Of a stretch of 64,000 nt of DNA, positions 16,621 to 64,000 are shown in pieces. How positions within the stretch are numbered: position 1 is the stretch's first letter; each line of letters starts with the position of its first letter. The DNA comes from Mytilus trossulus (taxonomy: Eukaryota): the NCBI RefSeq assembly GCF_036588685.1, contig NC_086379.1, positions 68,138,001 through 68,202,000 on the forward strand. Reading direction: 5' to 3'. Under the pieces are notes generated by a model. The model saw only the letters and a program-made list of their open reading frames with translations, was not told where the DNA came from and did not search any database. A program made the position numbers and the translations under genes.

Positions 16621-16655
16621 TATAAATATAGTGATATGAAAGTTAAAATCAATTC
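16621..16655 (+). promoter_or_regulatory. TATA box and putative initiator of the BTB gene
   Basis: TATAAATA at 16621, TCAATTC ~28 nt downstream, ATG at 16701. ATTAAA at 17503-17508 is a candidate polyA signal. Confidence 0.5.
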
Positions 16656-16700
16656 AAATTATATCTCTGTTTATACACACAAATATACAACACTTACAAA

Positions 16701-26206: not shown

Positions 26207-29200
26207 TTATGCCTCTACATCTAAACCAAGTCCTATTTTATGACCTCCTTGGTTGAAGTTCTTGCCTTCTATGAGAGTTGACAGAGTAAGTTTAACACCT
26301 ACAAAAACAAAGACAAAATGTAAATATTTCAGTTACAAAATTAAACTAGATTTTTTGATACACAAAAAAATCGTATATTTTGTCAAACATCATTTAATTT
26401 CATCAAATTTTCTTTATCTATTATTCAACTTTTTACTTTAAAGATTTAGTCTAACAGAGCAGCAGTCAATTACTTGCTAAAGTTATTGATATCATTTGAA
26501 TTACATTTAAAGATGTAATTGATGACATTAAAATTGTATTGATTTTTCGAAATAAAATTAACAACATTACATTTACATCGTAATGTAATTCTAAATAACA
26601 TTTCATCTTCTGTCTTTTGTGCTACAATAGTTATCAAAGGTACCAGGATTATAATTTCATGCATTTCATCTACATAAGACTCAACAGTGATGCTCATATC
26701 AAAATATTTATAAAGCCAAACAAGTACAAAGTTAAAGAGCATTGAGGATCCAAAATTCCCAAAAAGTTTCCAAATACGGATAAGGTAATCTTTGCCTGGG
26801 ATAAGAAAATCCTTAGTTATTTTTTAAATTAAAAGTTTTGTAACAGGAAATTTATAAAAATGACCATATAATTGATATTCATGTCAACACCAAAGTGCCG
26901 ACTACTGGGCCGGTGTTACGTACATACTTTGTTATTTGGGATAAAAATTTGAATCAGTTAGTATGAGGCTTCTTTACATGCAATGCTTAGCATTGAAATA
27001 TTTTGGTTACTTAATATAGAATTTCTTTAATATATTCAATCTAGTCTTTGAAAATTGACCTTGATAAACATCTTAAGTCCATTGTTTATGTCTATCATTT
27101 CTTACTGTAAAAAAACTAGTAATTTTTGGGTATTGACACACCAGTATTGTAATTTTAATAACACTAAAGTGGTCTGAATTGGTCTAGCATATGTTCTTGA
27201 TAGTTTAGTGAATTATCAGCAAAGTTCATTATAGACTCTTTTTAAAATATTACACATTTGTTTTTATTCCACATTATTTAATTTCTATAAAGGGCAGATG
27301 ATTGTTAATAACAAACATGAAAACAATTCATAAATTGTACTTTTTACATACCATCTCTTAATTTCTGGGAATATCCCATTCCAATCTGACTGCTGTTGTT
27401 TACTTTCAACTACAATAAAAAGCATGGTCTCATATAATAAAACTTTATAACCAAGCCAATGTTTATAAATGTAACAGATTTTCAAGTATTTAGATTGTGT
27501 TTGAGTGACATAATCCTGAATCTGTGTAAAATATTTGTTAATATGTTTTTGCAACAACCGTAATGAGGTAAAGACAAACTTTTTCAAAATCATATCCAAG
27601 ATTGGTTAAGATTGACCCAGTGGTTGCAGAGGAGCAAATTTGTGTGCAAATTAATGGATGAAAAACACCAAATTATTACAATAACATATACTGGAGCAGA
27701 CAGCAAGCTAAAAATCAAAAGGAGAAATTGATACTAAACTCTTATTTATTTGAAACTGACTGGAATACATTTCTAACTTTGTCATAATGAATACTTACAC
27801 TGACTGAAGAATCTCGGTCTAATACATATTTGGCCCCCAATCCAAATCTTGTAGCGTTACTTCCTGCGGCCCAGTTGAGGCTGACTCCAGCTTCTAAATC
27901 ATCACTGACTCGTTGGTAAATAGATGCACCAAATTCAGCTCCATCATTTCTACATTTTAAATCATTCATTTTTTAAACACAGGTAAAATGTTCATAGTCA
28001 TTTTTTTAAGATACAAAGATGCAAGAGTCTAAAATTAAATCATAAAATATCTACTCTAGACACCCATGCTTAATTTCACAATACCGTATATCAGTGAATC
28101 AGTATATCAGGCCACTAAATATGTTTTTAAAAGGCAATGTGATGACAAATAAAATGTGAGCACACCACTTTAAAGTGTGCTGAAAGGACAAAACTAACCT
28201 TAATTGACTAATATGTTATGGAACGTCACGTGAGGAAAATCAAATGAGATTTTTTTAAGAAAAGGAAATGTGCCTTCAAACTTGAAAGTGGTTTTGAAGA
28301 AATTTTACTCTTAATACCATACTCTATGACTTTCATTTTGTTCTATTTCTATTTCTAGGAGTTAATCCTAAAAATTCTTTTAAATTTTCCTTTCATAATA
28401 CATATTTTGTATGATTTTTATCACTTATACAATAACATCTCCATGCCTTATATATCAAGTACTGTAGTACGCCGCTAGATTAAAACTGACGAGGAAAGGT
28501 AACAGTTACACATGGCCACCGAAAGCTTTATTTTTGTAGAGTCCAAGTGGTCATGTGGTCTAGCGGGACGGCTGCAGTGCAGACTATTTGGTGTCACGAT
28601 ATCACAGTAGCATGGGTTCCAATCCCGGCGAGGGAAGAACAAAAAATTTGCGAAAGCAAATTTACAGATCTAACATTGTTGGGTTGATGTTTAGAGGTAT
28701 GTTTAGATGTACTTACACATTTGTATGGAGTGTAAAGTCACCAGTAGAGTAACCTACAGCAAAGTTGCTCTTGGAAAGTTTTGATTTGGAAGTATCAAAG
28801 CTCATCTGGTATCCACCAAGCCAGCCATTATACCTGTCATAAAGAGAGTAGATTTAACATTACAATATCAATTTCACATCAGTGTCACATATCATTAAAT
28901 ATAATTAGTCAAAAAGAAAATTTATTTTTTATTGGAAAATGCATGAATCATATATTGTGTGTGCATTTAGCAAATTTTGTTGGTTCAAACTGGAGTGTTT
29001 TAAACAGGACTCCCCTGCTGATCACCAGGCCAGGGAAGAACTGGCACTGCAGGACCAATTAAGCTTAAAATTAGCTTGCCTATTGAGCCATTTGAGTTTA
29101 AGAGGTCTATTATGTATTGGTAGAAATAAAATCTTTATGTGTCCTCTTCTGAACAGAACAGTTTGTACAAAAATTGAAGTTTTTCCTTTTGCAATTGCCA

Positions 29201-32200
29201 CAATAATTGTGTGATTTAACAGAGCTATTATCTATTTCACAGGCAAGCCCACCTTACAATTGAATGTTTTGGTGAGCTGTGTTACATATTATGACCTTAC
29301 CCTAATACTAAGGCACCATTCACAGCTGGTCCGGCAAAATCAAAGTTAACATCACATTCCATATTTACATAATCTTGTTTGTATCCAGTCTTAATTGTTC
29401 CCTGCTTCTTTCTGAAAAAAAAAGTTGGTGATATATACCTCTAAACATTTGCTAAAATGAACCATGCAAAATTTAACTCGTCGTTTTTTCTGAAATATTT
29501 TTTTCAATTCTACAGGCTTAAGACTTAGAATGTACATACAAAATGTTCAATTACAGTCAGGGTTTCCCTGGGTATATTTTATTTGTTGCCACTTCTTTTG
29601 CCAGAACAACCTTTTTTTTGCCACTTTCATTTTTTGCCAACTTACATATCTTTCATTTTTGACTTTGCTTCTTTCTATTAAAAGAAAAAATGTAAGGGGG
29701 TTTATTGGCACTCAGTGTATCTCTTTCATAATTTTAAAAGCTATTAAATGGTTTAGGAACTTTTAACTGCAGATTGTATGTAATGTTAACTGGAAGAAAA
29801 CTATGTACATAATTAAGTAGCTTAAAGAAAAACAGGAAATTTATTTTTACAAAATTTCCTTTAAGATACCATCTTTTGATCATAAGCAAGCTTCTGTCCA
29901 AATTTGATAGAAATCCAGGATAGTTTAAGAAAGTTATTGAAATTTTTAAAACTTTAACCACAAAGTGTATGCAATGTTAACTGGCTGAAAAACTAAGTCC
30001 ATTTATAAGTTAAATACGGATTTATAAACAGGTTGGTTGTTTTAACAATTTTTTTTCTGGATACTACATTTTTTTGCATCTTATGATCATAAACAAGCTT
30101 CTGTCCAAGTTCGGTAGAAATCAAGGACAGTTTTAATGTTTAAGAAATAAATAAAAATTTCAAACTCTTTTACAACAGAGTGAATATTTGTGGATTCCGC
30201 AGACTACGGAATGTAGGATGGCCATGTCAACCTTTTTGGACTGACTGAACTAAGGGAGGGGCCAGCTTCAGTCAAACATGCTTCATTGATTCCTGATATA
30301 TTTAACCATTTTGTTCCCACATAAGAGAGTTCAGTCTTTTATTCAGGATTTCAACATTCATTTAAAGACCATTTGCATCTTTGCCTGATGAAATATTGAA
30401 TATTGGTATGTACATGTTTAGTGTAAATGTATTTACCTTAAGGGGTCTGTGAAACTTTAAACAGTAAATTGCCAGGGTTTGCGGGATAGTGCAAAAACAA
30501 AAGAAATGTTTAATTTACTGAAAACAAAAAATACATATACTGCTTTCAAGATAAGCATTTTACTATTGAAATTGAATATGCTGTCAGCGATCCATGAGAG
30601 ATTTGAATGTTTTATCTTTTCATTTTCCTCTAATTCAAGGTGTATCAATTTTGTTTAGTAATTTTAATTTAAAGTGCTAAAAGAGAAAAAAAATTGAATG
30701 TCAATTGCTTAGCATTGGATGTTATTAAATAATAGATTAACAGAAAACAAACTTTTGTGATTGTATAGACCTTATGTGGATAGTCCTGTTTTTATTATCA
30801 GATTATGTATGTTATTGAAAATAATCATTCTGATCATTCAATGGTAGTTTTAGAATTTGAATTTAATTCTTTTGTTCAAGGTGAAGGTCTATGTAAATTC
30901 AATCATTCATTACTTTATGATATTGAATACATAAATAAATTATTAAAGATTATATAAGATTCAGAGGTGAAATAAAATGCTTCGCTGAGTGCAGTCTGAT
31001 ATGTCTGCAGATGTTGAACCCTCTGTTCCCAGCCTTTCATTTGTGATATGAAACTTTTTGGTACAATATAAGAGACTTACACACAAGATATTGTCCGGAA
31101 ACGAAAAGTGGTTTCGGGTTTATTGCTAGTAGTCTTTAAAAAGTTTTAAACAAATTGATTCATTTAGATCGAACTGGCTTCATCAGTGGATGTTTTATTG
31201 GGCATAACGTAAGATTGATTTACGATCTTTTACAATATTCAGAAGAACATAACATTCCAGGCGTATTGCCTTTTACTGATTTTGAAAAAGAAAACATTCT
31301 CTATCTTGGGACTTTCGGGTATTAGTATTGCAATTTTCAATTTTGGTGAATCTATTATTAGCTGGGTTTAGGCATTCTAAAATAATATCTCATCTGCATT
31401 TATTTAAGTGGAAATCTTTAATTTACATGTATGTATTAAAAGTTTCTATTAAACTTCCTGCCAAATTCTAGTCTTTGATTTGACCCTATTTTTTTACCTA
31501 CCCTGTCTGTGGAGCAAATGTTGTGTCAAATGCTAATTTTAAACCTTGAACAATTTGGTCCTCAACAGTTATTTCTGTGTTTAACACATTGTCTGTTGTC
31601 CATTTTTCTTTGAATGTTAATCCTAGAAAAAATATCAGGAATAATTTAATTCTAGATAGCAATGCCATGTACAATGTAAACTATTTTCATTCACAGATTA
31701 GTATTGTAATTTACACACACTGGTATTTATTTTTATTCATGTGATTTATTCTAAATATTTTCAGTATTTATCTTAATGACTTATCAAGATGGAGAAACAA
31801 ATTGTTTATTCATTCTTAGATATTTTCTAAAATGAGGAAATTTTATGACAAAAATACAATCAGAACATGCGCAATTGTTAGAAATGTCACACTTGACCAA
31901 CCACATCTACCCTATCACATGTAAAAAAGGCATGTGCCCTCAAGCTGATTCATGACCGATTTCCTTCACAGTTGATTATATATAACTTATGCATCTTATA
32001 CAAAATGGCCCAGGCATGAGTCATGGCCTATTACCTTACTGTTGATTATTTACAACTGATGTATTTTCATAGCAAATAGTGTACATGTCCATAGTGATGC
32101 ACATTTCACATGATTAAAATATAAATAAACAAGGGACAAGGTTGTCAAACACTTGATTACTTAGTTGAGGTCTGTGTATATAATTTGTTTAGGTCAATAA

Positions 32201-32999
32201 ATCAGAGTTCAAGGGTAATTTGAAAGTAAACTTACCGTAATCTTTCCATTTGTACTTGGTTTCTAAACTACCAGCAACTTTACCAGTATCGTGATTGTGG
32301 TCTAATTTACTTGTGAATTCTACTTTACTATCTGTTTTTGTTTTAGCCTCTAGTTTGTTGGTGCCAAAGTCTGAAAAATATCATCAATCATACACAATAA
32401 ATTACTATTGCCTGTTAAACTTACAGGAGTTCTCAAATCTATTATTTTTTATGTCACAGTCAGATATGGGCGCGACTTATGTATTTTCTTCAAAGGTCAT
32501 TTGGATGGTTAATTAGATAGCATCAATCCCATGCATTTTAGATTGTTTTACTTTTTGATAATTAGGAAAATAGTTTTAGTATATTTTAAATCAAATACGA
32601 GAATTTGAGTCAACTTTGTAAACATGAATATGACAGCTAAACTTTTGTTTAGACAAATAAAAAAAATGTTTGAATATTGGTCTTAGGACTCGTACTTTGA
32701 AAAGTTTTAGTGTAGTCTGGTGCAATATTATTCAGCAGACTAGCTATCTTACAACATAACCATCCAAAATTATGCAAGTTGGATTTGTCAACTAAATTTC
32801 CTTCCAGAATAATTTGTTATTACATTTGTTTAATAGATGTCCGCTATTTTACAACTTTGTCAGAAATGTAACATATATATATGAAGATAAAAAACATGCT
32901 GCAATTGAACAAGGTTCATATCAAAAAGTACGTACTGTAACCTTTACTGAAGAGATCCCTGGCAGATTTTCCTAAATCGGAATATGATGGAGGTGCCAT
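26207..32999 (-). CDS. VDAC: Voltage-dependent anion channel (mitochondrial porin), 282 aa. Coding exons 32999-32936, 32370-32236, 31622-31502, 29411-29301, 28833-28717, 27949-27799, 27409-27352, 26298-26207
   Basis: Exons total 849 nt, all GT-AG and phase-consistent. [21 protein letters not shown]...GSLETKYKW...GLTFKEKW...KVNNSSQIG...[13 protein letters not shown]. Confidence 0.97.
26625..26915 (-). mobile_element. Degenerate retrozyme copy (second family) in the last VDAC intron
   Basis: CATCACTGTTGAGTCTTATGTAGATGAAA (mutated hammerhead core) with family flanks. Similar decayed copies at ~17770-17940, 21450-21635, 41030-41165 and 49665-49860. Confidence 0.65.
28541..28695 (+). mobile_element. 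tRNA-headed SINE-like repeat in a VDAC intron
   Basis: A-box-like TGGTCATGTGG and B-box-like GGTTCCAATCC. A homologous copy lies at ~62675-62795. Confidence 0.6.
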
Positions 33000-34620
33000 T
33001 GTACCTAAGAAAAAAATTAATAAACTATATAAAGAAAGAGAGGCATGATCATATACTATAATAAAATGCTTTGCTGAGCACTGCCTGATACGACTGCAAA
33101 GGTCAACAATGGACAGTTGAGGCAAATTTGGTCACAATATATATTTAAGCTTGATACTGTCTAAATATGGATTGTGATCAAATTTTTTACAAAATTAGGG
33201 TTTCTGACACAAAAAATGGGGTCAAAGATCTTTAAAATCTCTTCTGACACTACTAGACTATCTGAAATCACAAAATTCACAATAATATTTAACATTACGG
33301 TAGAAAAAACATGACGCTATGATGGAAAATTTCTAGCTGTCAATGAAGATTTCATGGCAAAATTGGGTCTCAATGCAATGTCCCGCCCAAAATTCTGTAG
33401 ATGTCCAGACGTAATAAAGATATCTTTAATTTATTGGAATTAACTAAAGGAACCAATCTTGTATTACAACTCCAATTTCCCGTGCATGGGAGGGAAACAA
33501 AATAGTGCATTTTTTTCTGTTTGATTATATGTTTATGCTAAATTGAAACATGTATAGACTTTTAAAAAAATCTTGCATTTTTTGGGGATATCAATCCAGG
33601 AAAGTGGAAGGATATCATGTTTACTGGAAGTGGTGCAGCCTTGTAAAAATACACCTAATCGCTATTTATTCCATTCCGGATAAGTTCTAAAATTACACAA
33701 CTTTTTTATCCAGTCGAAGCTATCTGGGACCCTGTTTAAACAATTCACCATGCATGATACTTTTTAATGAGACCTGTTTAATCTACCGTAAATACTTCAA
33801 ACAGAATATTTGTTTACCTCAATTTTAATTTCGAAAAAAGTGGATCATACTATATCAAATTTTCTTGATGATCACTTTCTAAAGTTTTCATTCCCTCAAC
33901 TCACTGCTGATGACCTCCATTTTCGGCCCACATGACCTAAACAGGAAGTTGTATAAATGACTGTTTTTCCAGGAATGGACTAAATAGCGATAAGGTGTAT
34001 AGCAAACAGAAAGTAGAAAAAAATGTTTTGACTTCAGGATTGCGTTACTTTTTATTCTTCGTGGCAAAATCCCCTTTTTTATCGATTAAATCACAATTTC
34101 ACATTAATACATACATGATATGAACATGAATTTTTTTTTTCTATGTAACATTTTTTTATTTTTTATTTTCAAAGATCAGCTGTTTTGCATGTAAGACTAT
34201 GGAGCAGTCAATTATCAGACTGCAACCTAAATTATTCATGATGTTACCCTTTCCTTTAGGCTTTAAGGAGTTGGTTGGCCAGAGAATGCTGAGTGGGGAG
34301 ATGATGAACAAGTGAGTCGAATTGGTCAGGGACGAGTTAGCGAAAACGAAAGTCGATTTGGCATGGGCCGAGTTAGCACTGGGACGAGTTGTCACGGTCT
34401 TTCCATATATTTTTACAGATATTCCATGACGAAATATCCTTTCGAATTCGTTGAGGTCAGACACGGAGTCCGAGACAGATCTTTTTAAAGTTTTACCCTG
34501 CGTTGTTCGCATTAAATAGTTAATTTATTTGCTTGATTTTAAAAGCTGTTGTATTGATGTTTAAACAGAGACCCTTTTCATGCATAAATTTGATGCTATA
34601 AGTAAATATTTAATCCTTAC

Positions 34621-34700
34621 ACGCTTTTTCGCTTCTTTCCGTTTCTGCAGAGAGGACAAGAGAGTAATCAAGGTCACTTTTACGCAGTTTCCGGTTCCGA
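34621..34700 (-). promoter_or_regulatory. Putative non-coding first exon and core promoter of VDAC
   Basis: Minus strand: ETS-like CCGGAA, TGACC motif, polypyrimidine initiator CTCTCTTGTCCTCTC, then donor GT|GTAAGG at 34620. The acceptor at 33005-33006 lies 5 nt before the ATG, so an upstream exon is required. Confidence 0.5.
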
Positions 34701-35593
34701 ATTTTTGTCAAACAAAATTAATTACTGCATTTTATTTGTCACACGACGCGTTTAAACTTATGTTTTAAAACTTTAACCACTTAACCAAAATATCTTTTCA
34801 TTTATATAAAATCTTAATTATGGTATAACAACTAGGAGCCTGTTTGACTTGATATTATGCACGCTTAATACTTTGTTTTGGGAACCAGTATTAGAATTAA
34901 ACATACATTAAGTATACTGATCCCGTAAACATACCCCAAAGAACATGTTCACACCGATTCTCGAGTTGATATCAGTTATTTCCTTTCCTATAAAAAAAAA
35001 TTAAAATTAAAATTCCCTTACCAAACTACAAATCAAAAGTTCATACACATAAAACGAATGTCCGAATAATCGTCGTCACCACATTTTTGACTTGGTAAAT
35101 GCATTTTTTTGTGTCACGAGAAAATGGCGAATTAAACCTTGCTCAAACATGCCTTAATTCATTATTCTTACTCATTTCGTTTTTCTTTGATTTTACAGTA
35201 GGGGGCTGTTTTCTTCTTCTTTTGGTACAGCAACCATCAACGTACCGTGATGTTTATTTTCCGGCGCATGCCTGGTAAATGTTTCTAAATAAATTGATAA
35301 TGGATATTTTTTTGGTCAAAACTTTGATTAACAAATGATTTCTTGTTTAAAGTTGTTTTTGGTCATATATTTTCGTATTTTCATTTTTTTCTTTGTTTTT
35401 AATTTATTCATTTTTTTTTATTTAGTTTTAAATATTACATTTTGTATTAAATTTTTTTAGGTATAAGATATAAAAACAAGAGTATCCGTTTATTTCAAAT
35501 GAGGGTAGGTATCAAGGAGCACATCGTGAGTGAGTGCTGCATTGTAAGTTGAGGTTTTCTATAGTTGTGTTTTTAGTGATTTCAAAGGATAAT

Positions 35594-36071
35594 TATATCC
35601 CCGCTTTCAAAAAAGGGGGGTATACTGTTTTACCTCTGTCCGTCCGTCCGTCCGTCCGTCCGTCCGTCAGTCCGTCCCATGAAACTTTCGTCACATTTTT
35701 CTCAGGAACTACACATCCAACCTTTCTGTAATTTGGTATCAACATTTATATATTATGTCAGCCATACCGTGTGATGCGTTTTCAGATTCATCATTCATCG
35801 ACTTCCTGTTTACCGAACACTAGTATGATTTTACACAATATATAGCCAAGTTGAAAATTTTCGTCACATTTTTCTCAGGAACTACAATACAAGGATTTCT
35901 GAAATTTGGTTTCAGGATTTATATAAGTCAGCTATACCGTGTGATGCGTTTTCAGATTCATCACTCGACAGCTTCCTGTTTACCGAACACTTGCATATTA
36001 TTACACTATTAATATTATCCACTTGCGGCGGGGGTATCAACAGTGAGCAGTAGCTCGCAGTTTCACTTGTT
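35594..36071 (+). mobile_element. Complete HINE/pearl-like Helentron-associated element
   Basis: TATATCCCCGC...GCGGGGGTAT subterminal IR, (GTCC)n, two core repeats, 3' hairpin GTGAGCAGTAGCTCGC, ends CACTTGTT. Confidence 0.85.
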
Positions 36072-36399
36072 TGTTCCAGTCTTTCATAGCTGACTATGTG
36101 GTATGGGCTTTATTCATTGTTGACGGCCGTACAGTGACCTATATTTGTTAATGCTTGTGTCATTTTGGTCTTTTGTGGATAGTTGCCTCATTGGCAATCA
36201 TACCACATCTTCTTTTTTATATTTGATGGTTTGACAGAAAAAATAAAAATTATAGCTGTCTTTATTGCATCGAATTTGTCTGTAAGATCAGTCTACATTG
36301 GTGGATCTCGTAGTAGACTGGCTCTCTTGTACTACGTTATGCGATGGAATGGCTATATATAAATATTTTGAATTACAATTTTGTGGAAAATTATAAGCC

Positions 36400-37040
36400 T
36401 TGTTCGTAATCGTCGTTCTTGTAAGGTTTGTCATTTTATGGTGTTTAGCATCTCAGACACACTGCTTGTATTGTGATTTGTTGCACTCGTACCTTGCCGC
36501 CCGTCTCTGTACTTTTTCTAGTGATTTTATATTTTCGTTTGTAAATGGGTCCCATACAATACAATAGTATTCTAACTTTGGTCTTATAAGTGTTTGGTAC
36601 GCTCCTTCTTTAATTGTTTGCGATTGGACTTTGAGGTTTCTACTGATGAAATCTAAGGATTGATTTGCTTTTGCGGTGGTTTGTTGGATGTGGGTGTTCC
36701 ATTTTAGGTATGTTGAGATGGTGATGTCTAGGTATTTTGCATGTTTACCGATTCTAAAATGTGTCCATACATGTTATAATAAAAGTGGATGGGATTTCTT
36801 TTTGTTGTTATATTCATTATGTTACACTTGTCTCAGCGGATGAAAAGACGTAAGCCAATCTTTTCCCCATTGTATGGCAGCTGTCTAGGTCTTCCTGAAG
36901 CTTCAGGCAGTTGTTTTTGAGTTTTAATTTGTAGGTAGATTATACAGTTAGTGTCATTTGCGAAGAGTATGATTTTCTATGTTGGATGTAATGTGGGAGG
37001 TCATTTATGTATATTATAAAAAGTATTGGTCCTATACAGC
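36400..37040 (-). pseudogene. Degraded LINE reverse transcriptase fragment
   Basis: Minus strand reads GPILFIIYINDLP...LFA and further on AKYLDITIS, with stops and frameshifts. Ends approximate. Confidence 0.65.
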
Positions 37041-38622
37041 TACTTTTGCATAGGTACTTAAAAATTTGCAGTACTGGAAGTTTACTTGCAATATTTAGTA
37101 CGTTGTTTGACTTTAAAATGGTTGTAATATTGAGGTACTTGTATTTTCTAGTTTAAGTATCTTTAATAATGTACATATATTATTACATCTGTAAGTAAAT
37201 TATTTAGTTCAAAACCCTATGTATTCATTTTACTAAACCGTCGAACACAATATCGAGTTGAAACTTGGACTTGACTCTCTGTATACATACTTCGAAGACT
37301 CCGAGACAGCCAATGAGAAATGAAAGGATAACAGCAGTAATGATGCCAAATATCAAATTGGTTCCAATACATTTTCAAATCATACATTCTGCTAAAAAAA
37401 TAATTTCTTTCTATTTGAACATGAAAATAATAGAAAGCAACACCTTGGAACAGTATATCTAACAATATATATGTTCCTGGTTACACATATTCTATGCATA
37501 ATAATTACAATGATAAACAGAAGACATACAACAAACCAAATAGACACAATTGAACATAGTTTGGTAGTGTACATTGTAGCCGGAATGTGATTGCAAGACA
37601 AAGGCTGATTGGCCAGAGAAAACATGCAATGTAAGGTGTCTGTTGTTTATCTTTGTCAGTTTTATGACAATAAAGGAGTCCAGAGGTTCCCGAGCTGTTA
37701 TCTGCCATACTGAGTATTTGTTTTTTTTTATTAATCAGGTTTCTTTTAATCATAGTTTTAGTATTATCATATTGGTTTGTTCCAATGATAATTTGATTAT
37801 ATCAAAGTAAAATTGTGTTTTAACAAAACTGTTAAGTCTTTTATGTTACTTATATCTTTTTCGTTTTTTATTATCTTGAGCTTACTGCAAGGACGGCAGA
37901 AACTGCGTTTGAGTTCTGTTTTAAAGACAATACTATGATTTTGAGATAAAGCTAACAAACAATTATTCTTTTGATTCTGGTTTGTCAAGTATCAGTGAAT
38001 GGATTTTGAAGGTAGGAATGCAATATTCCCTTTATTGATTTATCCGTCAAATCATTTAAACTTTGATATTTCCAATCATGAAAAAGTGGAAACAAGAAGA
38101 CGAATTCGAGAATGCGATATAGGGCGAAAGGCATGTGTTAACCATAAATTCAATAATCACCAAAAGTGATCAGATGATTTAAAATTAGGCACTGGCTACG
38201 GTTACACGGAAATGTAACAATAATAAAAATATTATTGTTACATTGGAGACTAAATGCCGGAATGCATGGTTGGACAAGAACCTGTTTAATTACGAATGTA
38301 ACAATAATTATTGAGGCTACGGTTACATTGCGTTATTGTTACATGAAAAACAGCAATGTACGATGGGTAAAGTAATATGTACTAAATAATAAAAGTTGTA
38401 GACATTTATTTTATATTTACAATACATAAATTTATTACATACAAGAAACCAAATGACATAAAAATTAACGAGCAAAATTTCACTTAGACTTTTTCGCTTA
38501 GGATTATGAAATCTTCAGGCGACTGTGGAAGAACACAGTTTGTCATGATAACTTTATTACAAGGCACAGTAAATGTGCTTTGTCACGGTTTTTATTTGCG
38601 GGTTCTTTAATATGTATAAACC

Positions 38623-38656
38623 CAGAGACATATAATACAATTATTGTATGTCTCTG
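38623..38656. mobile_element. 34-bp palindromic transposon footprint with 7-bp TSD
   Basis: ATAAACC-CAGAGACATATAATACAATTATTGTATGTCTCTG-ATAAACC. Confidence 0.7.
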
Positions 38657-39409
38657 ATAAACCTTAGTATAGAAATTGCATAAGAAACGGCATAAAAAAA
38701 AATGCACGAAAGTCTAAAAAGTACATGACTGTGGTGGAAAACCTGCCATTCTTAATTTTTTTCTTATGGTCATCAAATTTTCAGTTATGACTACATGGAA
38801 TTTTTTAGGTAGTGTTATGTTGTTTTACAATACATATATTTCCGTTCTGATGATGTAAAATTGATAGCCGAGTTCTGTTATCAAACTCAATTTGGGTCAG
38901 AGCACGGATTTTGAAGTATTTAATTTATATTTTAAGAAAGAGAAGATAACTCCAAAAGTCCAGAAATAGGGTCCGAGGTCCATGCCTTGTTGCCAATGCT
39001 TGTTCTAAGTAAAATTGCAAAACATCAATAGTTCAAAGAAGTTTAAGATCAAGGTTAACATCTGTATAAATATAATTACAATCCCTCATCAAATGATCAG
39101 ATTCATGAGTCATGAGATACATGCATTAAAATTTCTCAAATGGGAGTTGGAGAGGACCATAAGTTGGCACAGACTTAGTCCAAAAATTATGATGTCTGGC
39201 ATATTTTTGTAGGAATGTATCCCAGAAAGAAAAAAAATTAGCCTTGCCAGACGTCATAATTATTTGGACAAGCATAGACTTGGCTGCGGAACTGTAGCTC
39301 TTAGGTCCTTATGTAATTTTTTGTCACAGGCAAGCCAAAAATAGAATGCATTAAAGTTTAGTTGAGTATTAATATACATGTATATCAAAGAGAACCAATC
39401 CGATGTAAA

Positions 39410-39760
39410 TCATGCTAATCAAAACTATTCTGTGTATAATTACTTATCAAAACTATTCTGCATATGTATTACTAATCATAACTATTCTGTATACTTATTA
39501 CTTATCATAACTATTCTGTATACTTATTACTTATCAAAACTATTCTGCATACTTATTTACTAATCAAAACTATTCTGCATACTTATTACTTATCAAAAAT
39601 ATTCTGTATACTTATTATTCATCAAAACTATTCTGCATACGTATTACTTATCAAAACTATTCTGCATACTGTATTACATATTACTTATCAAAACTATTCT
39701 GCATACTTATGACTTATCAAAACTATTCTGCATACTTATTGCTTATCAAAAATATACTTA
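39410..39760. repeat. ~29-bp minisatellite (ACTTATCAAAACTATTCTGCATACTTATT)n
   Basis: About 11-12 tandem units visible. Confidence 0.9.
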
Positions 39761-40242
39761 TACCATACACATTATCATGGTTATATTATAATTAGATTTA
39801 GAGACTCATAACCTTTTATATACTATTTAATGATGCAGCTTAGCTTCAGTAGGCCTATTTTAATTAACATTATTATAAATGAAGTTGTTTATTTTTTTTA
39901 TTTATACCAATTCAAGGGGACATACAATGTATAAGAATCAGAAGATGATTACCATTTATACATCTCTCCACATAGGATAAAATGACATAGAAATAAACCG
40001 CTATAGGTTGCAGTATGGCCTTCAACAATGACCAAAACCAATATGATCAACTTTAACATGCCCTTATGAAATGACAAAATTTGCAATGCCTTAATACTTT
40101 AAACCTGAGGATTTTATTATAAAGAAAAAATCCTATGCAAATCAAGCATGTAAAAAAAAAATTCCATGTAGGAAAGGGTTAAACTTCTATTATTACCCAC
40201 TTCTAAGAAAGTCGTTTTACCATATTTATATCTGTTGTAGTG

Positions 40243-42915
40243 ATGGTTGATCCTGTTACATGGAATTGTAAACAAGTTGGTCAGTGGTTGAAAGAAAATG
40301 GTTTTGAAAAATACAAGAAGTTACTCTGTGATGAGCATAAGATCAATGGTGAAGCATTACTGGTTCTGACAGAAAATGACTTGAAACAGCCACCATTACA
40401 GTTGACGGTTTTAGGAGATATTAAGCGGTTAATGCTTATCATTAGAAAAGTACAATTGCAGAGTAATGGTAACCAAAGCCCTCAACCAAATGGGTCCAGA
40501 ACATTCCAGAAAACACCAACACCTCTCTCAAGGTCATACCAACAGTCATCATCTTCACCAAACTATGAACGCTTGGATAGCAGTGAATCCTTGGAAGACA
40601 ATGATTATGTTGACTTAAATGAAATTTCACAACAGTTGAGACAAGGCCATTTCTCCAAAAATTTGGACCCAGAGCTATGGAAGACTGCTTTAAGTTTCGT
40701 TTATGTATTTACAGTTTTCTTAATGACTTCCTTTGTAATGGTTATAGTCCATGATAGGGTACCAGATACAGAGAAATATCCTCCATTGCCAGATATATTC
40801 TTAGATAATGTACCCTATATATCATGGGCATTTAAAGCATGTGAACTTATTGCATTAGGACTAGGATTAACATGGATTGTTTTATTATTCTTTCATAAAC
40901 ACAGGTTTGTAAAAAAAAATATGATAGATTTTGGTAAAGACAAAAGTTTATGTAGTATACATGTAGAAGTCTTTCCTAAACAAATGGCAATTAAACACAA
41001 ACCAAATTGTATTAATTTTATTCTATAGAAAAAACTCATCAAAGATACTTAGTAGACATAAAAGTTTGTACTCCAGATCAGCTTTTCATCTTAAAAAGAC
41101 TCATGAATATATAGTATGCAAATTAAAAAAGTTCTAAAGCCAAATCAAATAATATGAAGTTGAGTAAAGAACCAACTAAGTTACCTTTTTTATTGATGGT
41201 CTGAGTGTGTGTAGACATATAGAGCTTTTCATACAGTCTTTAACAATGAGAATTCCCCATTCTGTCCGACAGTCTGCAAACATTGTGATAAATTCAGCTA
41301 TCACAATCTATTATTTGAAACATACACTTCATTTTGAATAGAAGAAAGAAGAAGAGAATGATGAAATTCTTGACTTGGGACAGGTACATGTACATTAGCA
41401 TTGCTACATGTACATTTTAGTGGTGGTTAGACAAGTTGTCTTTATCAATACAGCAATAAAAAAAAAATCTTTCAATAATAATGTATCAAAGAATTTACAC
41501 AATGAGATCCAAAGTATGTTGGAAAAACTTCCTCTTTCCACTCAAGTTAAAAAAAAATCCTTTCAATGATTTAGTACATTTGTTTGTTTTTAAAGTTTAT
41601 ATTATTAAGAAAACTGTTGTTTTACAGATTTATATTAATGAGAAGAATGTTTTCCATGATAGGAACCATTTTTATACTACGTTGTATTTGTATGTTGATT
41701 ACATCATTGTCTGTACCAGGTGCACATCTGAAATGTGAAGGAAAGGTATGTTGCTATGGTAACAGAGATATATTAACCAATGATAACAAAACATTTCAAT
41801 GAAGAAAAGTCTTGAGTAAATACATTTAGAACCTCACCGAAAACCCATACCTGCCAACTGTCACTATTTGCTTGGGATTCCCCCATGAAGGCTCCTAAAT
41901 AGAAATTTTGAAAGAGCAATTTTGTAAACAATCTTAAACAAAACAGTTAATTTTATGAATGCTATAGGCTATTAATAGTATGAACATTGTTAGTCATGTT
42001 AACTGCAAGGAGATAATATGCTGGCTATGAGTGTTATTATTTATGTTCTATTCATTTAAGCTTTATGGAGATATATGGACCAAACTACGTAGAACGTTTG
42101 AAATCTGGACAGGACTAGGTATGACACTGTCAGGTGTTAGGACATGTGGAGATTATATGTTCAGTGGACATACAGTTTTTGTTACTATGCTCAATTTTCT
42201 CATAACTGAATGTAAGTTATCATTATATTGTTGGTTTATTGGTGTAATAATTTACAGGTTGAGTTTGTGTTGTTATGGATGAACTATTTTAAAAGTTGAT
42301 TATAAACTCATAAATTATGGCAATGCTTTTATTATTGGGGAAAATGCGACAGCCTTATAATCACAATAATTTAAACTCACATTTTGAAATTTTTTATATG
42401 AAAAAAACTGGCTTTTTCTCAGTATCCCAAAAATTGAAATAGCATTTAAGTCTAAAATGACAATTTCGCAATAGTAAATGCATGCAATAATTTCTGAATT
42501 GACAGTATCATTGAATGACAATACACTATTTAATATATTGCCTTTCTGTTTTTCAGACACACCAAGAAAGATGTATTATCTCCATACTTCAGCATGGGTA
42601 GCCAACATGTTTGCACTATTCTTCATTCTAGCAGCCCATGAGCATTACTCCATAGATGTTTTCGTAGCTTTCTACATCACGTCCCGTATGTTTCTATATT
42701 ACCACACTCTTGCCAATAACCGTTCACTTATGTTACGTGATAAAAAGAGAACACGTATCTGGTTTCCTTTATTCACGTTCTTTGAGTCTAGATGTGATGG
42801 TATTGTACCTAATGAGTTTGAATGGCCGCTGCCTAGTTGGGAACAAGTTAAACACATGTTTATTGGATTGAAATCAGACATTGCAGCCAGTTCTAAGAAC
42901 AAAAAGAAGCTGTGA
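40243..42915 (+). CDS. SAMD8: Sphingomyelin synthase-related protein / ceramide phosphoethanolamine synthase (SMSr), 429 aa. Exons 40243-40904, 41628-41745, 42061-42211, 42557-42915
   Basis: N-terminal SAM domain, HDRVP...PPLPD, RRMF...[13 protein letters not shown] and HEHYSIDV motifs. 1290 nt, phase-consistent GT-AG introns. Confidence 0.96.
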
Positions 42916-61324: not shown

Positions 61325-64000
61325 ATGTCCGACCCTTTATTATGGAACTGTGAAAGAGTGAAACAATTTTTAAGTGAAAACGGATTGCAAGAATACCAGA
61401 AACTACTATGTGATGAGAACAGAATCGACGGCCGTGTTCTCCTAACATTGACAGAGAAGGATTTATATCAGCTTAAAATATCAGCTTTAGGCGATATCAA
61501 AAGACTATTGTTTGCAATCCAAGACCTTCAGAGTGGACAGAATTCACGGTTACAATTTCCAAATTACCATAATGACTGTCATTCGTCCTCTTCCTCAGAA
61601 AGTTCCTACATGATAGATATTCTAGATTCCTCTGACGATGAAAAACATAACTATAGGTCAAAACGGAAAATAAATCAAGAAGTATGGAAGACGGGTGTCA
61701 GCATTGTCTATACATTCATTGTACATTTTGTGACTAGTTTTGCTATCATAGTTGCACAAGAGCGCATGCCTGACAAAAAGCAATATCGCCCATTACCTGA
61801 CGTTATGCTAGATAGTATAACTTATGTACCATGGGCATATAAAGTGACGGAGGGAGTTATTTTAGCTGGATTTATTACATATTTTATAATATTAGTATTT
61901 CACAAATATAGGTACGTATATATAGGCCTATAGGTTCAGATGAACTAAGCAAGAAAGACATAGTAGTTTGCAGAGAATATCTTTCATTCAAAGCAGAAAA
62001 TAAAAATAAATTATTAATTTAGAAGTCAGTTTATGGCTTCGTTCGGGTTTATATCGCCAACAAGGAAAACAAAGTATAAAATAAAATTGAAAGATATGGT
62101 ATGATTATTAATGAGACAACTCTTAACCAAAGACCAGATGGCGTAGAAGGTTGGCAACTATCTAACAATTCAACTTACTAGGAATTAGTATCAAAGCTGG
62201 TTTTTTTTTTAGTAAAGTGAGTGAAGTTTTGGTATGTGTTCACGTACTTTCTTTCTAGATATGCTAAAGTCACGTTATTGAAATGTTCAAATCTGTATTA
62301 AAGTAAAAGTAAATTTAGGGATTTGGATTTAGCATGCGATCTTCAATCATACTTTTCAGAATAAAGTCAGACTGATCTCCAAAACCTAATAATAATAGAA
62401 CTAATCCTAAGCTGTTATGTAATTATTGCATGCTTTGGGATTTCATGTAATCTATATAATACTAAGGATATGTAGTCAACCACTATAATTTAATAATAAA
62501 ACGATTTGTATATTTTCAGGTTTATTTTACTCAGAAGAATGTTTGTCATTGCCGCCTCAATCTTTTTATTTCGCAGTATATGTGTGATCGTTACCTCATT
62601 ACCGATGCCTCAAGAAAATTTCAACTGTGAAAAACTGGTATGTCATCATTTTTATACAAAGGATAAATCAAATTGATCGAGTGGTCTATAGTGCGTCGGG
62701 CATAGTGCAAAGGCGATTTGGTGCCACGATATCTCAGTAGCATGAGTTCGAATCGCAGCCAAAAGAAAAACTGCGGAAAAAATACAAATCTAACATACCC
62801 TCAACTATGTCTTTACATCATTATTTTTTGTCCCAAAAATATGAAGGCCATTGTCAATTAATTATACTAGTAGTTAAAGGCCGAAACTATGAAACACTCA
62901 AAAAGCTTTTGACAATATTTAAAACGGTATACCTTTGCATTGATATGGAATGGAAGAGAACATTCAGAAAACAACTCTGTATAGTGCCAACTTAGTCTCT
63001 CATAAAAAATTTCTTGTATGGATATGTATATTGAGCTTTGACTTTAGTTTAGATTGAACGTGACTTCTCCGACAAATTACAACCATGATACTAGTACATT
63101 ACTTGTAAAACAATCTTTACATTAAAGATTGATATCAAAATTCAAAATTATCGATACGCACAATCAACAATTGAAATTGTATTAAAAAAAAGGATATAGC
63201 AGACATAATGTAGAACTTAAATAACACGAGTCAAATGATGCAACATATTGAAAAAATCTTAGCAACTGCACATGCAATTTAAATTATATTTTTAGGTATT
63301 TAAAAACGGCTGGGAACGATTTTCAAGAGCTCTAGAGATTTATTCCGGAATGGGAATGAAAGTCTCTGGATTAAAAACATGTGGAGATTACATGTTTAGT
63401 GGACATACAGTCACAATAACAACTCTTATTCTTCTCATTAATGAATGTAAGTAAATCTTATGTATATATGTTCCGTTACATCACATCTACTTCATGATAT
63501 CATATGGAACTTACTTTGAATCTATTGATTTATGATTTAGATTTTTTTAAAACCAATACCAACAACATGGAAAGAGAAAGAAACAGAAATCAACGACTTA
63601 TATTCTCAGCCATACTGAAAACATCTTCAGTATATAAATGGCCAGTTGTAATCAATTTCAAGATATAGAGTACCATTTAATAGCAGACCATTTTAACTTT
63701 TGGTGTTTGCTATCCCATATAATTGTAATTGAAAATGATCACAACTTATTGCTACACTGCTAATTTTTTTTTAAAAGAGGTACATAAAAAATTGTTTCGA
63801 TCACATATAAAGTCAGAGATGGAGTCGATTTATTCGTGAATTAATTTTTCGCCAAGTGTTTCGTTATTTACTTCAATTTTCAAAATCGGAATCAATGTGT
63901 GTACGTTGACCAACGTCATAATTTAATTATTATTTATTTCAGATACACCAAAAAGATGGATATTTCTACACATACTGGTGTGGATTGTGGGGTTGTCTGG
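61325..64000 (+). CDS. Second, diverged SAMD8/SMSr-like paralogue, 3'-partial. Exons 61325-61911, 62520-62637, 63296-63446, 63943->64000
   Basis: SAM domain, RPLPD, RRMF and [10 protein letters not shown] motifs. Internal exon sizes (118, 151) and intron phases are identical to the first copy. Confidence 0.93.

What the first reader, a model, noticed from the sequence alone, without database searches (positions are those of the whole stretch)
26207..42915. VDAC and SAMD8/SMSr are adjacent head-to-head: possible ancient ceramide-apoptosis gene pair
Seen: a complete VDAC (-) and a complete SAMD8 (+) diverge from a ~7-kb interval with no recognisable gene between them. Known (from memory, verify): human SAMD8 and VDAC2 are neighbours on 10q22, there in tandem orientation. 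SMSr controls ER ceramide and suppresses ceramide-induced mitochondrial apoptosis, and ceramide binds VDAC1/2 through a membrane-facing glutamate. Inference: linkage in a probable mollusc suggests microsynteny from the bilaterian ancestor, possibly kept by shared regulation of a ceramide sensor and a ceramide effector.
Basis: partly seen in the sequence, partly recalled or inferred. Interest (0 to 1): 0.78.

Follow-up and report, generated by a model that had tools for sequence, protein, structure and literature searches.

The report
Mussel VDAC and SAMD8 gene neighbours
A mussel's mitochondrial pore gene (VDAC) and its ceramide-handling gene (SAMD8/SMSr) sit back to back as direct neighbours, as their counterparts do in vertebrates; this is probably a relic of very old gene order, with no sign so far that the two genes are regulated together.

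Summary
The window is Mytilus trossulus (chromosome-scale contig C7). A complete VDAC lies on the minus strand: 8 coding exons, 282 codons, stop at 26207-26209, and a non-coding leader exon at about 34621-34663 seen in spliced RNA contigs. A complete SAMD8/SMSr lies on the plus strand: 4 coding exons, 40243-42915. The two diverge, with 7,243 bp between start codons and no recognisable gene between them.

Ancient linkage is likely but rests on two phyla. SAMD8 and VDAC2 are consecutive in human and sheep gene lists. The same mussel chromosome also carries an adjacent ADK-KAT6 pair and the BK channel gene, which are other human 10q22 neighbours, each about 12 Mb from the window.

Shared regulation is not supported. 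The VDAC start site is up to 5.6 kb, and probably about 3.5 kb, from SAMD8's. The spacer is full of repeats and has two separate CpG-rich patches. Orientation differs from human (recalled). SMSr-deficient mice have normal ceramide. Arthropod-like metagenome contigs show other genes flanking SAMD8.

The scan has noted other mussel-human neighbour pairs in this genome (THADA-ZFP36, RNF170-HOOK), but not this pair.

The parts
26207..32999 (-). VDAC coding region. Eight CDS exons: 32999-32936, 32370-32236, 31622-31502, 29411-29301, 28833-28717, 27949-27799, 27409-27352, 26298-26207 (stop included). 282 codons.
   Evidence: tblastn of database VDACs. Splice enumeration. Porin_3 on 3 of 3 exon ORFs tested. 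The end of the first coding exon, at 32936, matches a loose end in RNA contigs.
31502..31622 (-). VDAC exon that carries the glutamate equivalent to human VDAC2 E84 / VDAC1 E73 (in ...LTFKEKW...).
   Evidence: phmmer alignment to human VDAC2 chain 7nie_C, positions 78-119. The role of this residue is taken from PMC6478893.
33005..34620 (-). VDAC intron 1 (1,616 bp, GT..AG on the minus strand). It contains a repeat that is covered by many diverged contigs.
   Evidence: Joint 33001->34618 (cut +3) in 2 of 4 runs, X1 and X2. The AG before 33004 and the GT at 34620-34619 were read directly.
34621..34663 (-). VDAC non-coding leader exon. The transcription start is at or just beyond about 34647-34663.
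   Evidence: 43 and 30 letters lie on the far side of the joint. The X1 contig stops at 34647 and is followed by sequencing-adapter letters. Depth is 0 in all four runs at 34730-34929.
34664..40242 (.). Spacer between the VDAC start site and the SAMD8 start codon. No recognisable gene. The SAMD8 leader exon, if there is one, lies somewhere in here and has not been placed.
   Evidence: 0 of 4 ORFs had a Pfam match. No Rfam family or tRNA. CpG o/e is about 1.1-1.2 at 34001-36000 and 0.93 at 38001-39000, against 0.27-0.42 in the gene bodies. An AG acceptor stands directly before 40241.
35530..36330 (.). Abundant dispersed repeat, with a (GTCC)n run and a 170-bp unit repeated 1.9 times. A second copy lies at 2932-3365.
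   Evidence: Summed contig depth reaches 5,700-88,500. Self-BLAST. Tandem Repeats Finder.
36456..36773 (-). Fragment resembling the region after the RT domain of a LINE, by eye. It resembles window 51224-51760, which lies beside an RVT_1 ORF.
   Evidence: ORF listing. RVT_1 at 50360-50803. The fragment itself has no Pfam match.
38130..38729 (.). Weak island of RNA-contig cover. It is a candidate for the SAMD8 leader exon or promoter region, or it may be a repeat. Unresolved.
   Evidence: Depth 25-454 in all four runs at 38130-38329. The one piece shown (38214-38357) is only about 93% alike and ends just before a GT.
39418..39763 (.). Tandem array with a 29-bp unit, about 11 copies, 480 bp upstream of the SAMD8 start codon.
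   Evidence: Tandem Repeats Finder. Self-BLAST.
40243..42915 (+). SAMD8/SMSr coding region. CDS exons 40243-40904, 41628-41745, 42061-42211, 42557-42915 (stop included). 429 codons. SAM domain in exon 1; the motifs [10 protein letters not shown] and HYSIDV...Y...F..YH in exons 3 and 4.
   Evidence: Per-exon exact match to P0002. Pfam SAM_1 and PAP2_C. The motif definitions come from PMC7521967. These residues are invariant in 14 SMSr proteins.
61325..64000 (+). Context: a diverged tandem SAMD8-like paralogue that runs off the window. It is not part of the pair.
   Evidence: tblastn of P0002 gives 39%, 44% and 58% identity over three exons. SAM_1. PAP2_C at C7:68201377-68202091. CpG o/e 0.82.

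Best explanation
Two ordinary, broadly used genes lie as immediate neighbours in divergent orientation on Mytilus trossulus chromosome C7. One is the only clear VDAC gene of the genome. The other is the SMSr/SAMD8 orthologue.

The most likely reading is that the adjacency is inherited. The two genes were already neighbours in the protostome-deuterostome ancestor and have stayed together in the mollusc and vertebrate lines, while the rest of the neighbourhood was shuffled within the chromosome. That would make the pair one more conserved ancestral microsyntenic pair.

Each gene appears to have its own promoter. VDAC starts at about 34.65 kb with a short leader exon. SAMD8 probably starts near 38-39 kb. 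Repeats lie in between.

What is shown: the gene models, the adjacency, the VDAC leader exon, the conserved glutamate, the vertebrate adjacency (from papers), and the chromosome-scale homology.

What is inferred: that the adjacency is ancestral, the position of the SAMD8 promoter, and that nothing more than slow decay of gene order is needed to explain the retention.
For: - Gene models and adjacency.
- Nothing recognisable lies between the genes.
- Copy number. Porin_3 matches in the genome are three exons of this gene plus one single-exon hit on C6. No PAP2_C locus is on C6. There is therefore one VDAC-SMS pair.
- Vertebrate adjacency, from passages.
- Homology of the chromosome region, tested family by family.
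  - KAT6-type MYST gene at C7:55.996 Mb.
  - Adenosine kinase 36 kb from it, on the same strand.
  - BK/Slo1 at C7:80.69 Mb.
  - With C7 at 6.6% of the genome, 3 of 5 assignable neighbours on C7 has P = 0.0026. Counting ADK-KAT6 as one unit gives P = 0.024.
- Chance adjacency of two given genes on one chromosome is about 0.0005-0.001 for an assumed (not measured) 2,000-4,000 genes on C7.
- Nearly 600 such ancient pairs of unrelated genes are on record (595 CAMPs, PMC3514665 passages).
- Separate promoters. Depth is zero at 34730-34929 and at most 6.5 up to 35529. CpG o/e has two peaks.
Against: - Only two phyla were compared, so independent juxtaposition is not excluded by data.
- Orientation differs between mussel (5'-5') and human (co-directional, recalled). 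At least one inversion is therefore needed.
- Retention of exactly this pair, while COMTD1-like, vinculin-like and DSPc genes left the chromosome or dispersed, could also be read as a sign of constraint.
- The SAMD8 start site was not located. In principle a leader exon close to the VDAC start is still possible.
- Orthology of the ADK, KAT6 and BK counterparts rests on the best PDB match of single exons.
Confidence: 0.62

Rival explanations
1. Functional coupling. The pair is held together by selection because the ER ceramide controller (SMSr) and the mitochondrial ceramide receptor (VDAC) need coordinated transcription from a shared regulatory region.
For: - Head-to-head orientation in the mussel, with no gene between.
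- Both gene bodies are CpG-depleted and flank one CpG-rich spacer, as expected of two broadly expressed genes.
- The glutamate needed for ceramide binding is conserved.
- SMSr suppresses ceramide-induced mitochondrial apoptosis in cultured cells (abstracts; review passages).
- Conserved pairs are enriched in 5'-5' orientation and in co-expression (PMC3514665 passages).
- This pair stayed together while other 10q22 neighbours dispersed.
Against: - The VDAC start lies up to 5.6 kb from the SAMD8 start codon, and probably about 3.5 kb from its start site. Repeats lie between them and there are two separate CpG-rich patches. This is not the <1 kb bidirectional layout described for HSPE1-HSPD1.
- Orientation is not conserved with human (recalled). 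Coregulated pairs are expected to keep it.
- SMSr-null or catalytically dead mice show no phenotype and unchanged ceramide.
- Hexokinase-I also binds the same glutamate (PMC11811193 abstract), so its conservation does not point to ceramide specifically.
- SAMD8 has other neighbours in copepod-like and chelicerate-like contigs.
- Co-expression could not be measured, because contig depth cannot rank genes.
Confidence: 0.1
2. Bystander linkage. The two genes stay together because long-range enhancers of a nearby developmental regulator are interleaved with them (a genomic regulatory block), so that breaks between them are selected against.
For: - In vertebrates SAMD8 and VDAC2 are listed in one cluster of ultraconserved non-coding elements, with ZNF503, KAT6B, ADK, KCNMA1, COMTD1, DUSP13 and DUPD1 (PMC3436827 table passage).
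- Regulatory blocks are one of the two general causes proposed for ancient pairs (PMC3514665).
Against: - In the mussel no developmental regulator was seen within 100 kb on either side. ORFs of 100 or more residues were read by eye; 10 were sent to Pfam and 8 matched. The matches were VWA, PAN and EGF_CA exons of a giant extracellular protein gene, aconitase, transposase-type domains and a domain of unknown function.
- The nearest HMG-box hits on C7 are about 9-10 Mb away.
- The nlz1 and CTNNB1_binding models found nothing anywhere in the genome, which is inconclusive.
- Both genes are small (about 8.5 and at least 2.7 kb) and lack the long introns typical of bystander genes.
- Genes made of short exons would have been missed by the ORF screen.
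Confidence: 0.1
3. Coincidence. The genes were not neighbours in the bilaterian ancestor, and the mussel and vertebrate adjacencies arose independently by rearrangement within a conserved chromosome.
For: - Only two phyla are in evidence.
- Orientation differs (recalled).
- Everything else in the neighbourhood differs.
- 0 of 80 metagenome SAMD8 loci hold a VDAC exon.
Against: - The chance of two given genes becoming adjacent on one chromosome is about 0.0005-0.001. Hundreds of inherited pairs are known.
- The ADK-KAT6 pair from the same human block is also kept on the same mussel chromosome.
- Most of the 80 loci are too short to be informative, and the informative ones look arthropod-like.
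Confidence: 0.15

Closest known systems
Conserved ancestral microsyntenic pairs (CAMPs) of Irimia et al. 2012 (PMC3514665; passages read)
   Same: Two unrelated genes that are immediate neighbours in deeply diverged animal lineages. The 5'-5' layout seen in the mussel is the orientation enriched among CAMPs.
   Different: CAMP status needs conservation in at least 4 of 11 lineages. Only vertebrates and one mollusc are shown here. Orientation is not kept (recalled). Neither gene name occurs in the paper's main text (0 occurrences).
HSPE1-HSPD1 type bidirectional-promoter pairs (as described in PMC3514665)
   Same: Divergent orientation of two functionally related housekeeping genes, one of them mitochondrial.
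   Different: In those pairs the intergenic distance is under 1 kb and the orientation is conserved. Here the start codons are 7.2 kb apart, the VDAC start site is up to 5.6 kb from the SAMD8 start codon, and repeats fill the spacer.
Vertebrate 10q22 block ADK-KAT6B-DUPD1-DUSP13-SAMD8-VDAC2-COMTD1-ZNF503 and its cluster of ultraconserved elements (PMC11339866, PMC10376747, PMC3436827; passages)
   Same: SAMD8 next to VDAC(2), and ADK next to KAT6(B). Mussel counterparts of ADK, KAT6B, SAMD8, VDAC2 and KCNMA1 all lie on one chromosome.
   Different: In the mussel the block is split into pieces about 12 Mb apart. COMTD1-like, vinculin-like and DSPc genes are not on C7. No NET-family gene was found (inconclusive). 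The orientation of the pair differs (recalled).

Membership tests
VDAC (eukaryotic porin, Pfam Porin_3) | Sequence match to the Porin_3 profile along the protein | tested here: met
   3 of 3 exon ORFs tested match Porin_3 (49.2, 36.0 and 18.3 bits; the last is below the 28.4 cut-off). Eight exons align to database VDACs over their whole length. A genome search rings on three exons of this gene.
VDAC (eukaryotic porin, Pfam Porin_3) | Complete open reading frame of the usual animal length (about 282-283 residues) | tested here: met
   The best splice-consistent model has 282 codons from the ATG at 32999 to the TAA at 26207-26209. Many database insect VDACs are 282 aa long.
VDAC (eukaryotic porin, Pfam Porin_3) | 19-strand beta-barrel with an N-terminal helix | not tested
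   A fold prediction would need the joined exon model.
Ceramide-binding VDAC (VDAC1/2 type, as opposed to VDAC3) | Bilayer-facing glutamate at the position of human VDAC1 E73 / VDAC2 E84 (Gln in VDAC3) | tested here: met
   The mussel ...LTFKEKW... aligns to ...LTFTEKW... of human VDAC2 chain 7nie_C, positions 78-119, with the Glu at position 84. The requirement for this residue is from PMC6478893. Ceramide binding by the mussel protein itself cannot be tested with these tools.
SMSr / SAMD8 (sphingomyelin synthase-related protein) | N-terminal SAM domain | tested here: met
   SAM_1 at E = 1.1e-12, residues 7-70 of the exon-1 ORF.
SMSr / SAMD8 (sphingomyelin synthase-related protein) | The two LPP-like motifs, C-G-D-X3-S-G-H-T and H-Y-T/S-X-D-V-X3-Y-X6-F-X2-Y-H | tested here: met
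   [10 protein letters not shown] is in exon 3 and [21 protein letters not shown] in exon 4. The motif definition is from PMC7521967. These residues are invariant in an alignment of 14 SMSr proteins. PAP2_C matched at 30.4 and 53.4 bits.
SMSr / SAMD8 (sphingomyelin synthase-related protein) | Orthology to SMSr rather than to SMS1/SMS2 | tested here: inconclusive
   Identity is 54-56% to proteins that NCBI names SMSr in a ray and a salamander. Three further PAP2_C loci lie on C3, C10 and C13, besides the tandem copy. No tree with SMS1/SMS2 was built.
SMSr / SAMD8 (sphingomyelin synthase-related protein) | Ceramide phosphoethanolamine synthase activity and ER residence | not testable with these tools
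   This needs an enzyme assay and a localisation experiment.
Conserved ancestral microsyntenic pair (CAMP, Irimia et al. 2012) | Neighbours (four or fewer intervening genes) in at least 4 of 11 major metazoan lineages | tested here: inconclusive
   Shown in vertebrates (papers) and in one mollusc (this window). It was not seen in copepod-like or chelicerate-like contigs. Named invertebrate genomes could not be reached.
Bidirectional-promoter gene pair | 5'-5' orientation | tested here: met
   VDAC is on the minus strand and SAMD8 on the plus strand, and they diverge.
Bidirectional-promoter gene pair | Start sites less than about 1 kb apart with a shared promoter | tested here: inconclusive
   The VDAC start is at about 34647-34663. 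The SAMD8 start was not located. Against a shared promoter: depth is zero at 34730-34929 and at most 6.5 up to 35529; there are two CpG-rich patches; and there is a cover island at 38130-38729. No 5'-end data were available.

The most novel reading that the evidence does not exclude
SAMD8-VDAC is a bilaterian-wide gene pair kept together by selection. On this reading the enzyme that clears ER ceramide and the mitochondrial pore that senses ceramide are transcribed from one regulatory domain, so that their dosage stays matched. The pair would then survive inversions and the break-up of everything around it. This would give genomic support to a ceramide-to-VDAC death pathway older than vertebrates.
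Probability: 0.08. Interest if true: 0.65.

Novelty: new member of a known kind. Interest (0 to 1): 0.33.

Why it matters
If the adjacency proves to be widespread, it adds one more ancient gene pair to the roughly 600 already catalogued. This one links two proteins that one research line already connects biochemically: SMSr limits ER ceramide, and ceramide binds VDAC2 to trigger apoptosis. That would justify asking whether the two genes are co-regulated.

As it stands, the finding is a correct and tidy annotation plus a plausible case of retained gene order. I found no paper that names it: no paper in the library holds both 'SAMD8' and 'microsynten...', and none of the 3 papers with 'microsynteny' and 'VDAC' concerns it, judging by title and abstract. 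Nothing in the mussel sequence itself calls for a functional explanation.

The side result may be of more use for chromosome-evolution work than the pair itself: ADK-KAT6 is also kept, and five human 10q22 genes map to one mussel chromosome.

Tried and rejected
1. Neighbour look-up in named animal genomes. 

2. Getting mollusc VDAC proteins with locus tags, so that adjacency could be read from tag or accession order.
- The one representative search, with a 76-residue exon ORF, returned mostly fragments.
- The fragment I took for a close relative (P0139) turned out to be dipteran, and its search listed insects only.
- An exact look-up of the ten best fragments gave no names.
- This route was dropped.

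3. Metagenome scan for SAMD8 loci.
- 80 loci were kept. 0 of 80 hold a VDAC exon, either by tblastn with 5 VDAC queries at E <= 1e-3 or by a local profile of 4 VDACs. The profile found 5 exons, all of them in the window; its N-terminal third is not modelled.
- Only 13 of the 80 loci are 8.7 kb or longer.
- The lophotrochozoan-like loci (L049, L057, L069, L075, L077) have only 2.6-5.8 kb upstream of the gene. That is less than the 7.2 kb needed to see the mussel arrangement, so they say nothing.

4. Viral contig scan: one distant PAP2_C-like hit, irrelevant.

5. Regulator genes near the pair. The nlz1, CTNNB1_binding and Ala_racemase_N models found nothing in the genome. These models also rang in no control, or only in bacterial controls, so the result is inconclusive.

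6. SAMD8 start site. The one read-laying run covered 32930-38929, so the acceptor at 40241 lay outside it. The cover island at 38130-38729 may be a repeat (about 93% alike). Unresolved.

7. Co-expression could not be measured, because all four runs are contigs.

8. Rejected idea: a hidden gene in the spacer.

9. The supplements of PMC3514665, which list the 595 pairs, are closed. They may already contain this pair.

Full report
What is there.

The window is a gap-free stretch of Mytilus trossulus chromosome-scale contig C7, at 68,138,001-68,202,000. A search with the large first SAMD8 exon returned P0002, which NCBI names 'sphingomyelin synthase-related protein 1-like [Mytilus trossulus]', at 100% identity. 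Translated one at a time, all four exons (40243-40904, 41628-41745, 42061-42211, 42557-42915) are exact substrings of that protein. Pfam finds a SAM domain in exon 1 and PAP2_C in exons 3 and 4. The two catalytic motifs of the sphingomyelin synthase family, as given in PMC7521967, are present. They are invariant in an alignment of 14 SMSr proteins from molluscs, an annelid, nemerteans, a horseshoe crab, echinoderms and vertebrates.

On the minus strand, eight exons between 32999 and 26207 align in order to database VDACs. Three of three tested exon ORFs match Porin_3. Among 3456 splice-consistent combinations, the best-scoring one gives 282 codons, the usual length of animal VDACs.

The VDAC 5' end.

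Both start-codon exons are immediately preceded by an AG acceptor, so untranslated leader exons were expected. I laid contigs of four public runs on 32930-38929. The runs are labelled 'RNA?', a guess. Two of the four runs (X1, X2) hold a contig that joins 33004 to 34621 and skips 1,616 bases whose ends read GT..AG on the minus strand. The donor GT at 34620-34619 is in the sequence. The far side of the joint is 30 and 43 letters long, and one contig stops at 34647 followed by adapter letters. VDAC therefore has a short non-coding first exon, and its transcription start lies at about 34.65 kb. The spliced joint itself shows that these two runs contain RNA.

The spacer.

- Distances: 7,243 bp lie between the start codons, and 5,579 bp lie between the VDAC leader exon and the SAMD8 start codon.
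- No gene: none of four ORFs tested in this stretch matches Pfam. There is no Rfam family or tRNA.
- Repeats: a very abundant repeat lies at about 35.5-36.3 kb, with summed contig depth of thousands to tens of thousands and a second copy at 2.9-3.4 kb of the window. Further on lie a fragment that by eye resembles the region after the RT domain of a LINE, at 36456-36773 (no Pfam match), and a 29-bp tandem array at 39.4-39.8 kb.
- CpG: observed/expected is 0.42 over the VDAC unit and 0.27 over the SAMD8 coding span. It is about 1.1-1.2 at 34-36 kb and 0.93 at 38-39 kb, with a dip between the two. In an animal with gene-body methylation this pattern suggests two broadly expressed genes, each with its own unmethylated 5' region. 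That is an inference.
- RNA cover: contig depth is zero at 34730-34929 and at most 6.5 up to 35529. A weak island of cover follows at 38130-38729.
- SAMD8 start: it was not located. The island could be its leader exon or a repeat. The one piece shown is only about 93% alike, though it ends just before a GT.
- Conclusion: the two start sites are at most 5.6 kb apart and probably about 3.5 kb apart. A compact shared promoter is unlikely but not excluded.

The functional premises.

Passages of PMC6478893 confirm three points. Human VDAC1 and VDAC2 bind ceramide. Binding needs the bilayer-facing Glu (E73/E84; Gln in VDAC3). VDAC2 E84 is needed for ceramide-induced apoptosis. The mussel exon aligns to human VDAC2 with the Glu in place.

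Abstracts of PMC2711605, PMC5264588 and PMC5567093 confirm the ER-ceramide and anti-apoptotic role of SMSr in cultured cells. Two points count against a tight physiological link. SMSr-knockout and catalytically dead mice have no phenotype and unchanged ceramide (PMC7521967 section 14). Hexokinase-I also binds the same glutamate (PMC11811193 abstract).

Is the linkage old?

Vertebrates.
- A human candidate-region list reads VCL, AP3M1, ADK..., KAT6B, DUPD1, DUSP13, SAMD8, VDAC2, COMTD1, ZNF503-AS1 (PMC11339866).
- A sheep interval lists ADK, KAT6B, DUPD1, DUSP13, SAMD8, VDAC2, COMTD1, ZNF503 (PMC10376747).
- In chicken, VDAC2, COMTD1, SAMD8 and DUSP13 share one 1-Mb bin (PMC13196519).
- The same genes form one cluster of ultraconserved elements that was compared with teleosts (PMC3436827).
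No call shows it.

The mussel genome, family by family.
- MOZ_SAS has four loci, two of them on C7. The best, at 55.996 Mb, is KAT6-type by its best PDB matches.
- A multi-exon PfkB gene lies 36 kb from it on the same strand and is adenosine kinase. The human ADK-KAT6B adjacency is therefore kept as well.
- The best BK_channel_a locus is on C7 at 80.69 Mb and is a BK/Slo1 channel.
- Two of three Sec23/24-trunk loci are on C7. I did not assign them.
- Not on C7: Methyltransf_3 (COMTD1-like; C2 and C3), vinculin-family loci, and all 42 DSPc matches.
- C7 is 6.6% of the genome. Three of five assignable neighbours on C7 has a binomial tail of 0.0026, or 0.024 if ADK-KAT6 is counted as one unit.
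- The mussel chromosome therefore appears to be homologous to the human 10q22 region, but scrambled. Only the two small pairs remain adjacent, about 12 Mb apart.
- The 100 kb on either side of the window hold exons of a giant VWA/PAN/EGF protein gene, transposon-type ORFs and an aconitase gene. They hold no counterpart of a human neighbour and no evident developmental regulator. Genes with short exons would have been missed.

Other animals.
- A scan of metagenome contigs gave 80 SAMD8-like loci. None holds a VDAC exon.
- Most of these loci are cDNA-like or short.
- In L023 the SAMD8-like gene lies between liprin-alpha and Mpp10. The best named relatives of its Mpp10 are copepods.
- In L026, which is closest to spider SMSr, the 10 kb downstream hold Ala_racemase_N, ANTH and syntaxin genes.
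- L055 has patatin and SAC3/GANP genes downstream. L060 has a Sec23/24 gene downstream. L048 has an ankyrin gene downstream.
- The adjacency is thus absent in several arthropod-like genomes.
- The lophotrochozoan-like contigs have too little upstream sequence (2.6-5.8 kb) to say anything.
- No cnidarian or invertebrate deuterostome could be examined.

Weighing.
- Two given genes on one chromosome become neighbours by chance with a probability of about 0.0005-0.001. Nearly 600 inherited pairs of unrelated genes are documented across animals (PMC3514665). Inheritance is therefore the better explanation of the mussel-vertebrate agreement, but it rests on two phyla.
- The same paper lists the expectations for pairs kept by coregulation: 5'-5' orientation, conserved orientation, short intergenic distance, co-expression. 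This pair meets the first, in the mussel only. It fails the second (recalled) and fits the third poorly. The fourth could not be tested.
- For a regulatory-block explanation there is a vertebrate precedent, the ZNF503 cluster, but no regulator gene near the mussel pair.
- My reading is retained ancestral adjacency with no demonstrated constraint.
- The scan's notes show that other mussel-human neighbour pairs were flagged in this same genome: THADA-ZFP36 and RNF170-HOOK. That fits such pairs being fairly common here. I did not check those notes.

Novelty and score.

No paper in the searched library holds both 'SAMD8' and 'microsynten...'. Of the three papers with 'microsynteny' and 'VDAC', none concerns this pair, judging by title and abstract. 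The CAMP list of Irimia et al. is in closed supplements and may include it.

I class the finding as a new member of a known kind. It is of modest interest: a correct observation, a plausible ancient linkage, and an appealing but so far unsupported functional story.

Noticed in passing
G000:C7:55995921-55997135 (L081) and G000:C7:56032678-56037245 (L082): A KAT6-type MYST acetyltransferase gene and an adenosine kinase gene lie 36 kb apart on the same strand. This matches the human ADK-KAT6B neighbour order. It is a second retained pair from the same human 10q22 block, 12 Mb from the window.
   Followed up: partly
window 61325-64000 and beyond (C7:68201377-68202091): A tandem, diverged SAMD8-like paralogue (39%, 44% and 58% identity over three exons). 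It is not CpG-depleted (o/e 0.82, against 0.27 for SAMD8), which suggests a different, narrower expression.
   Followed up: partly
window 16647-17420 (+) and L083 6994-7779 (-) = C7:76.285 Mb: A 258-residue BTB-domain ORF in the window has an 88% identical copy 8 Mb away on the same chromosome. The copy lies inside or beside a MYST gene that looks Tip60-like by eye. This is a recently duplicated intronless gene or a mobile cassette.
   Followed up: partly
window 35530-36330 and 2932-3365: A dispersed repeat with a (GTCC)n run and a 170-bp unit. Summed contig depth in all four runs is thousands to tens of thousands. It is a highly abundant, apparently transcribed repeat family.
   Followed up: no
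window 33530-34330 (inside VDAC intron 1): A stretch covered by many contigs at 90-95% likeness, with internal 'joints' of 83-367 bases. It is probably another repeat family with length variants, not an exon.
   Followed up: no
window 30800-31330 (VDAC intron 3) and 50360-51760: LINE-type remains. RVT_1 matches at 50360-50803. ORFs that look like endonuclease/RT pieces, by eye, lie in the VDAC intron.
   Followed up: no
L026 (metagenome contig Ga0058701_10000334), 1786-2793: In a chelicerate-like contig the gene directly downstream of the SAMD8-like gene has an Ala_racemase_N domain (PLPBP-like). Human PLPBP lies at 8p11 near ZNF703 and VDAC3 (recalled), the region paralogous to 10q22. This may be a trace of a larger ancestral neighbourhood.
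   Followed up: no
L042 (metagenome contig Ga0126338_10010278), 1318-2062 and 3897-6534: Two tandem SAMD8 exon-1-like copies lie on one contig of an unidentified animal. Tandem duplication of this gene is therefore not confined to Mytilus.
   Followed up: no
G000:C7:68038001-68138000 (L086-L095) and window 4000-14000: A very large plus-strand gene with VWA, PAN and calcium-binding EGF exons fills the 100 kb left of the window and is CpG-depleted throughout. The 406-residue ORF at window 8396-9613 may be one of its last exons.
   Followed up: partly
L085 (IMG/VR contig IMGVR_UViG_3300025886_000040), 10001-10381: A contig filed as viral encodes a distant PAP2_C-like stretch (27% identity to SMSr residues 226-359).
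   Followed up: no
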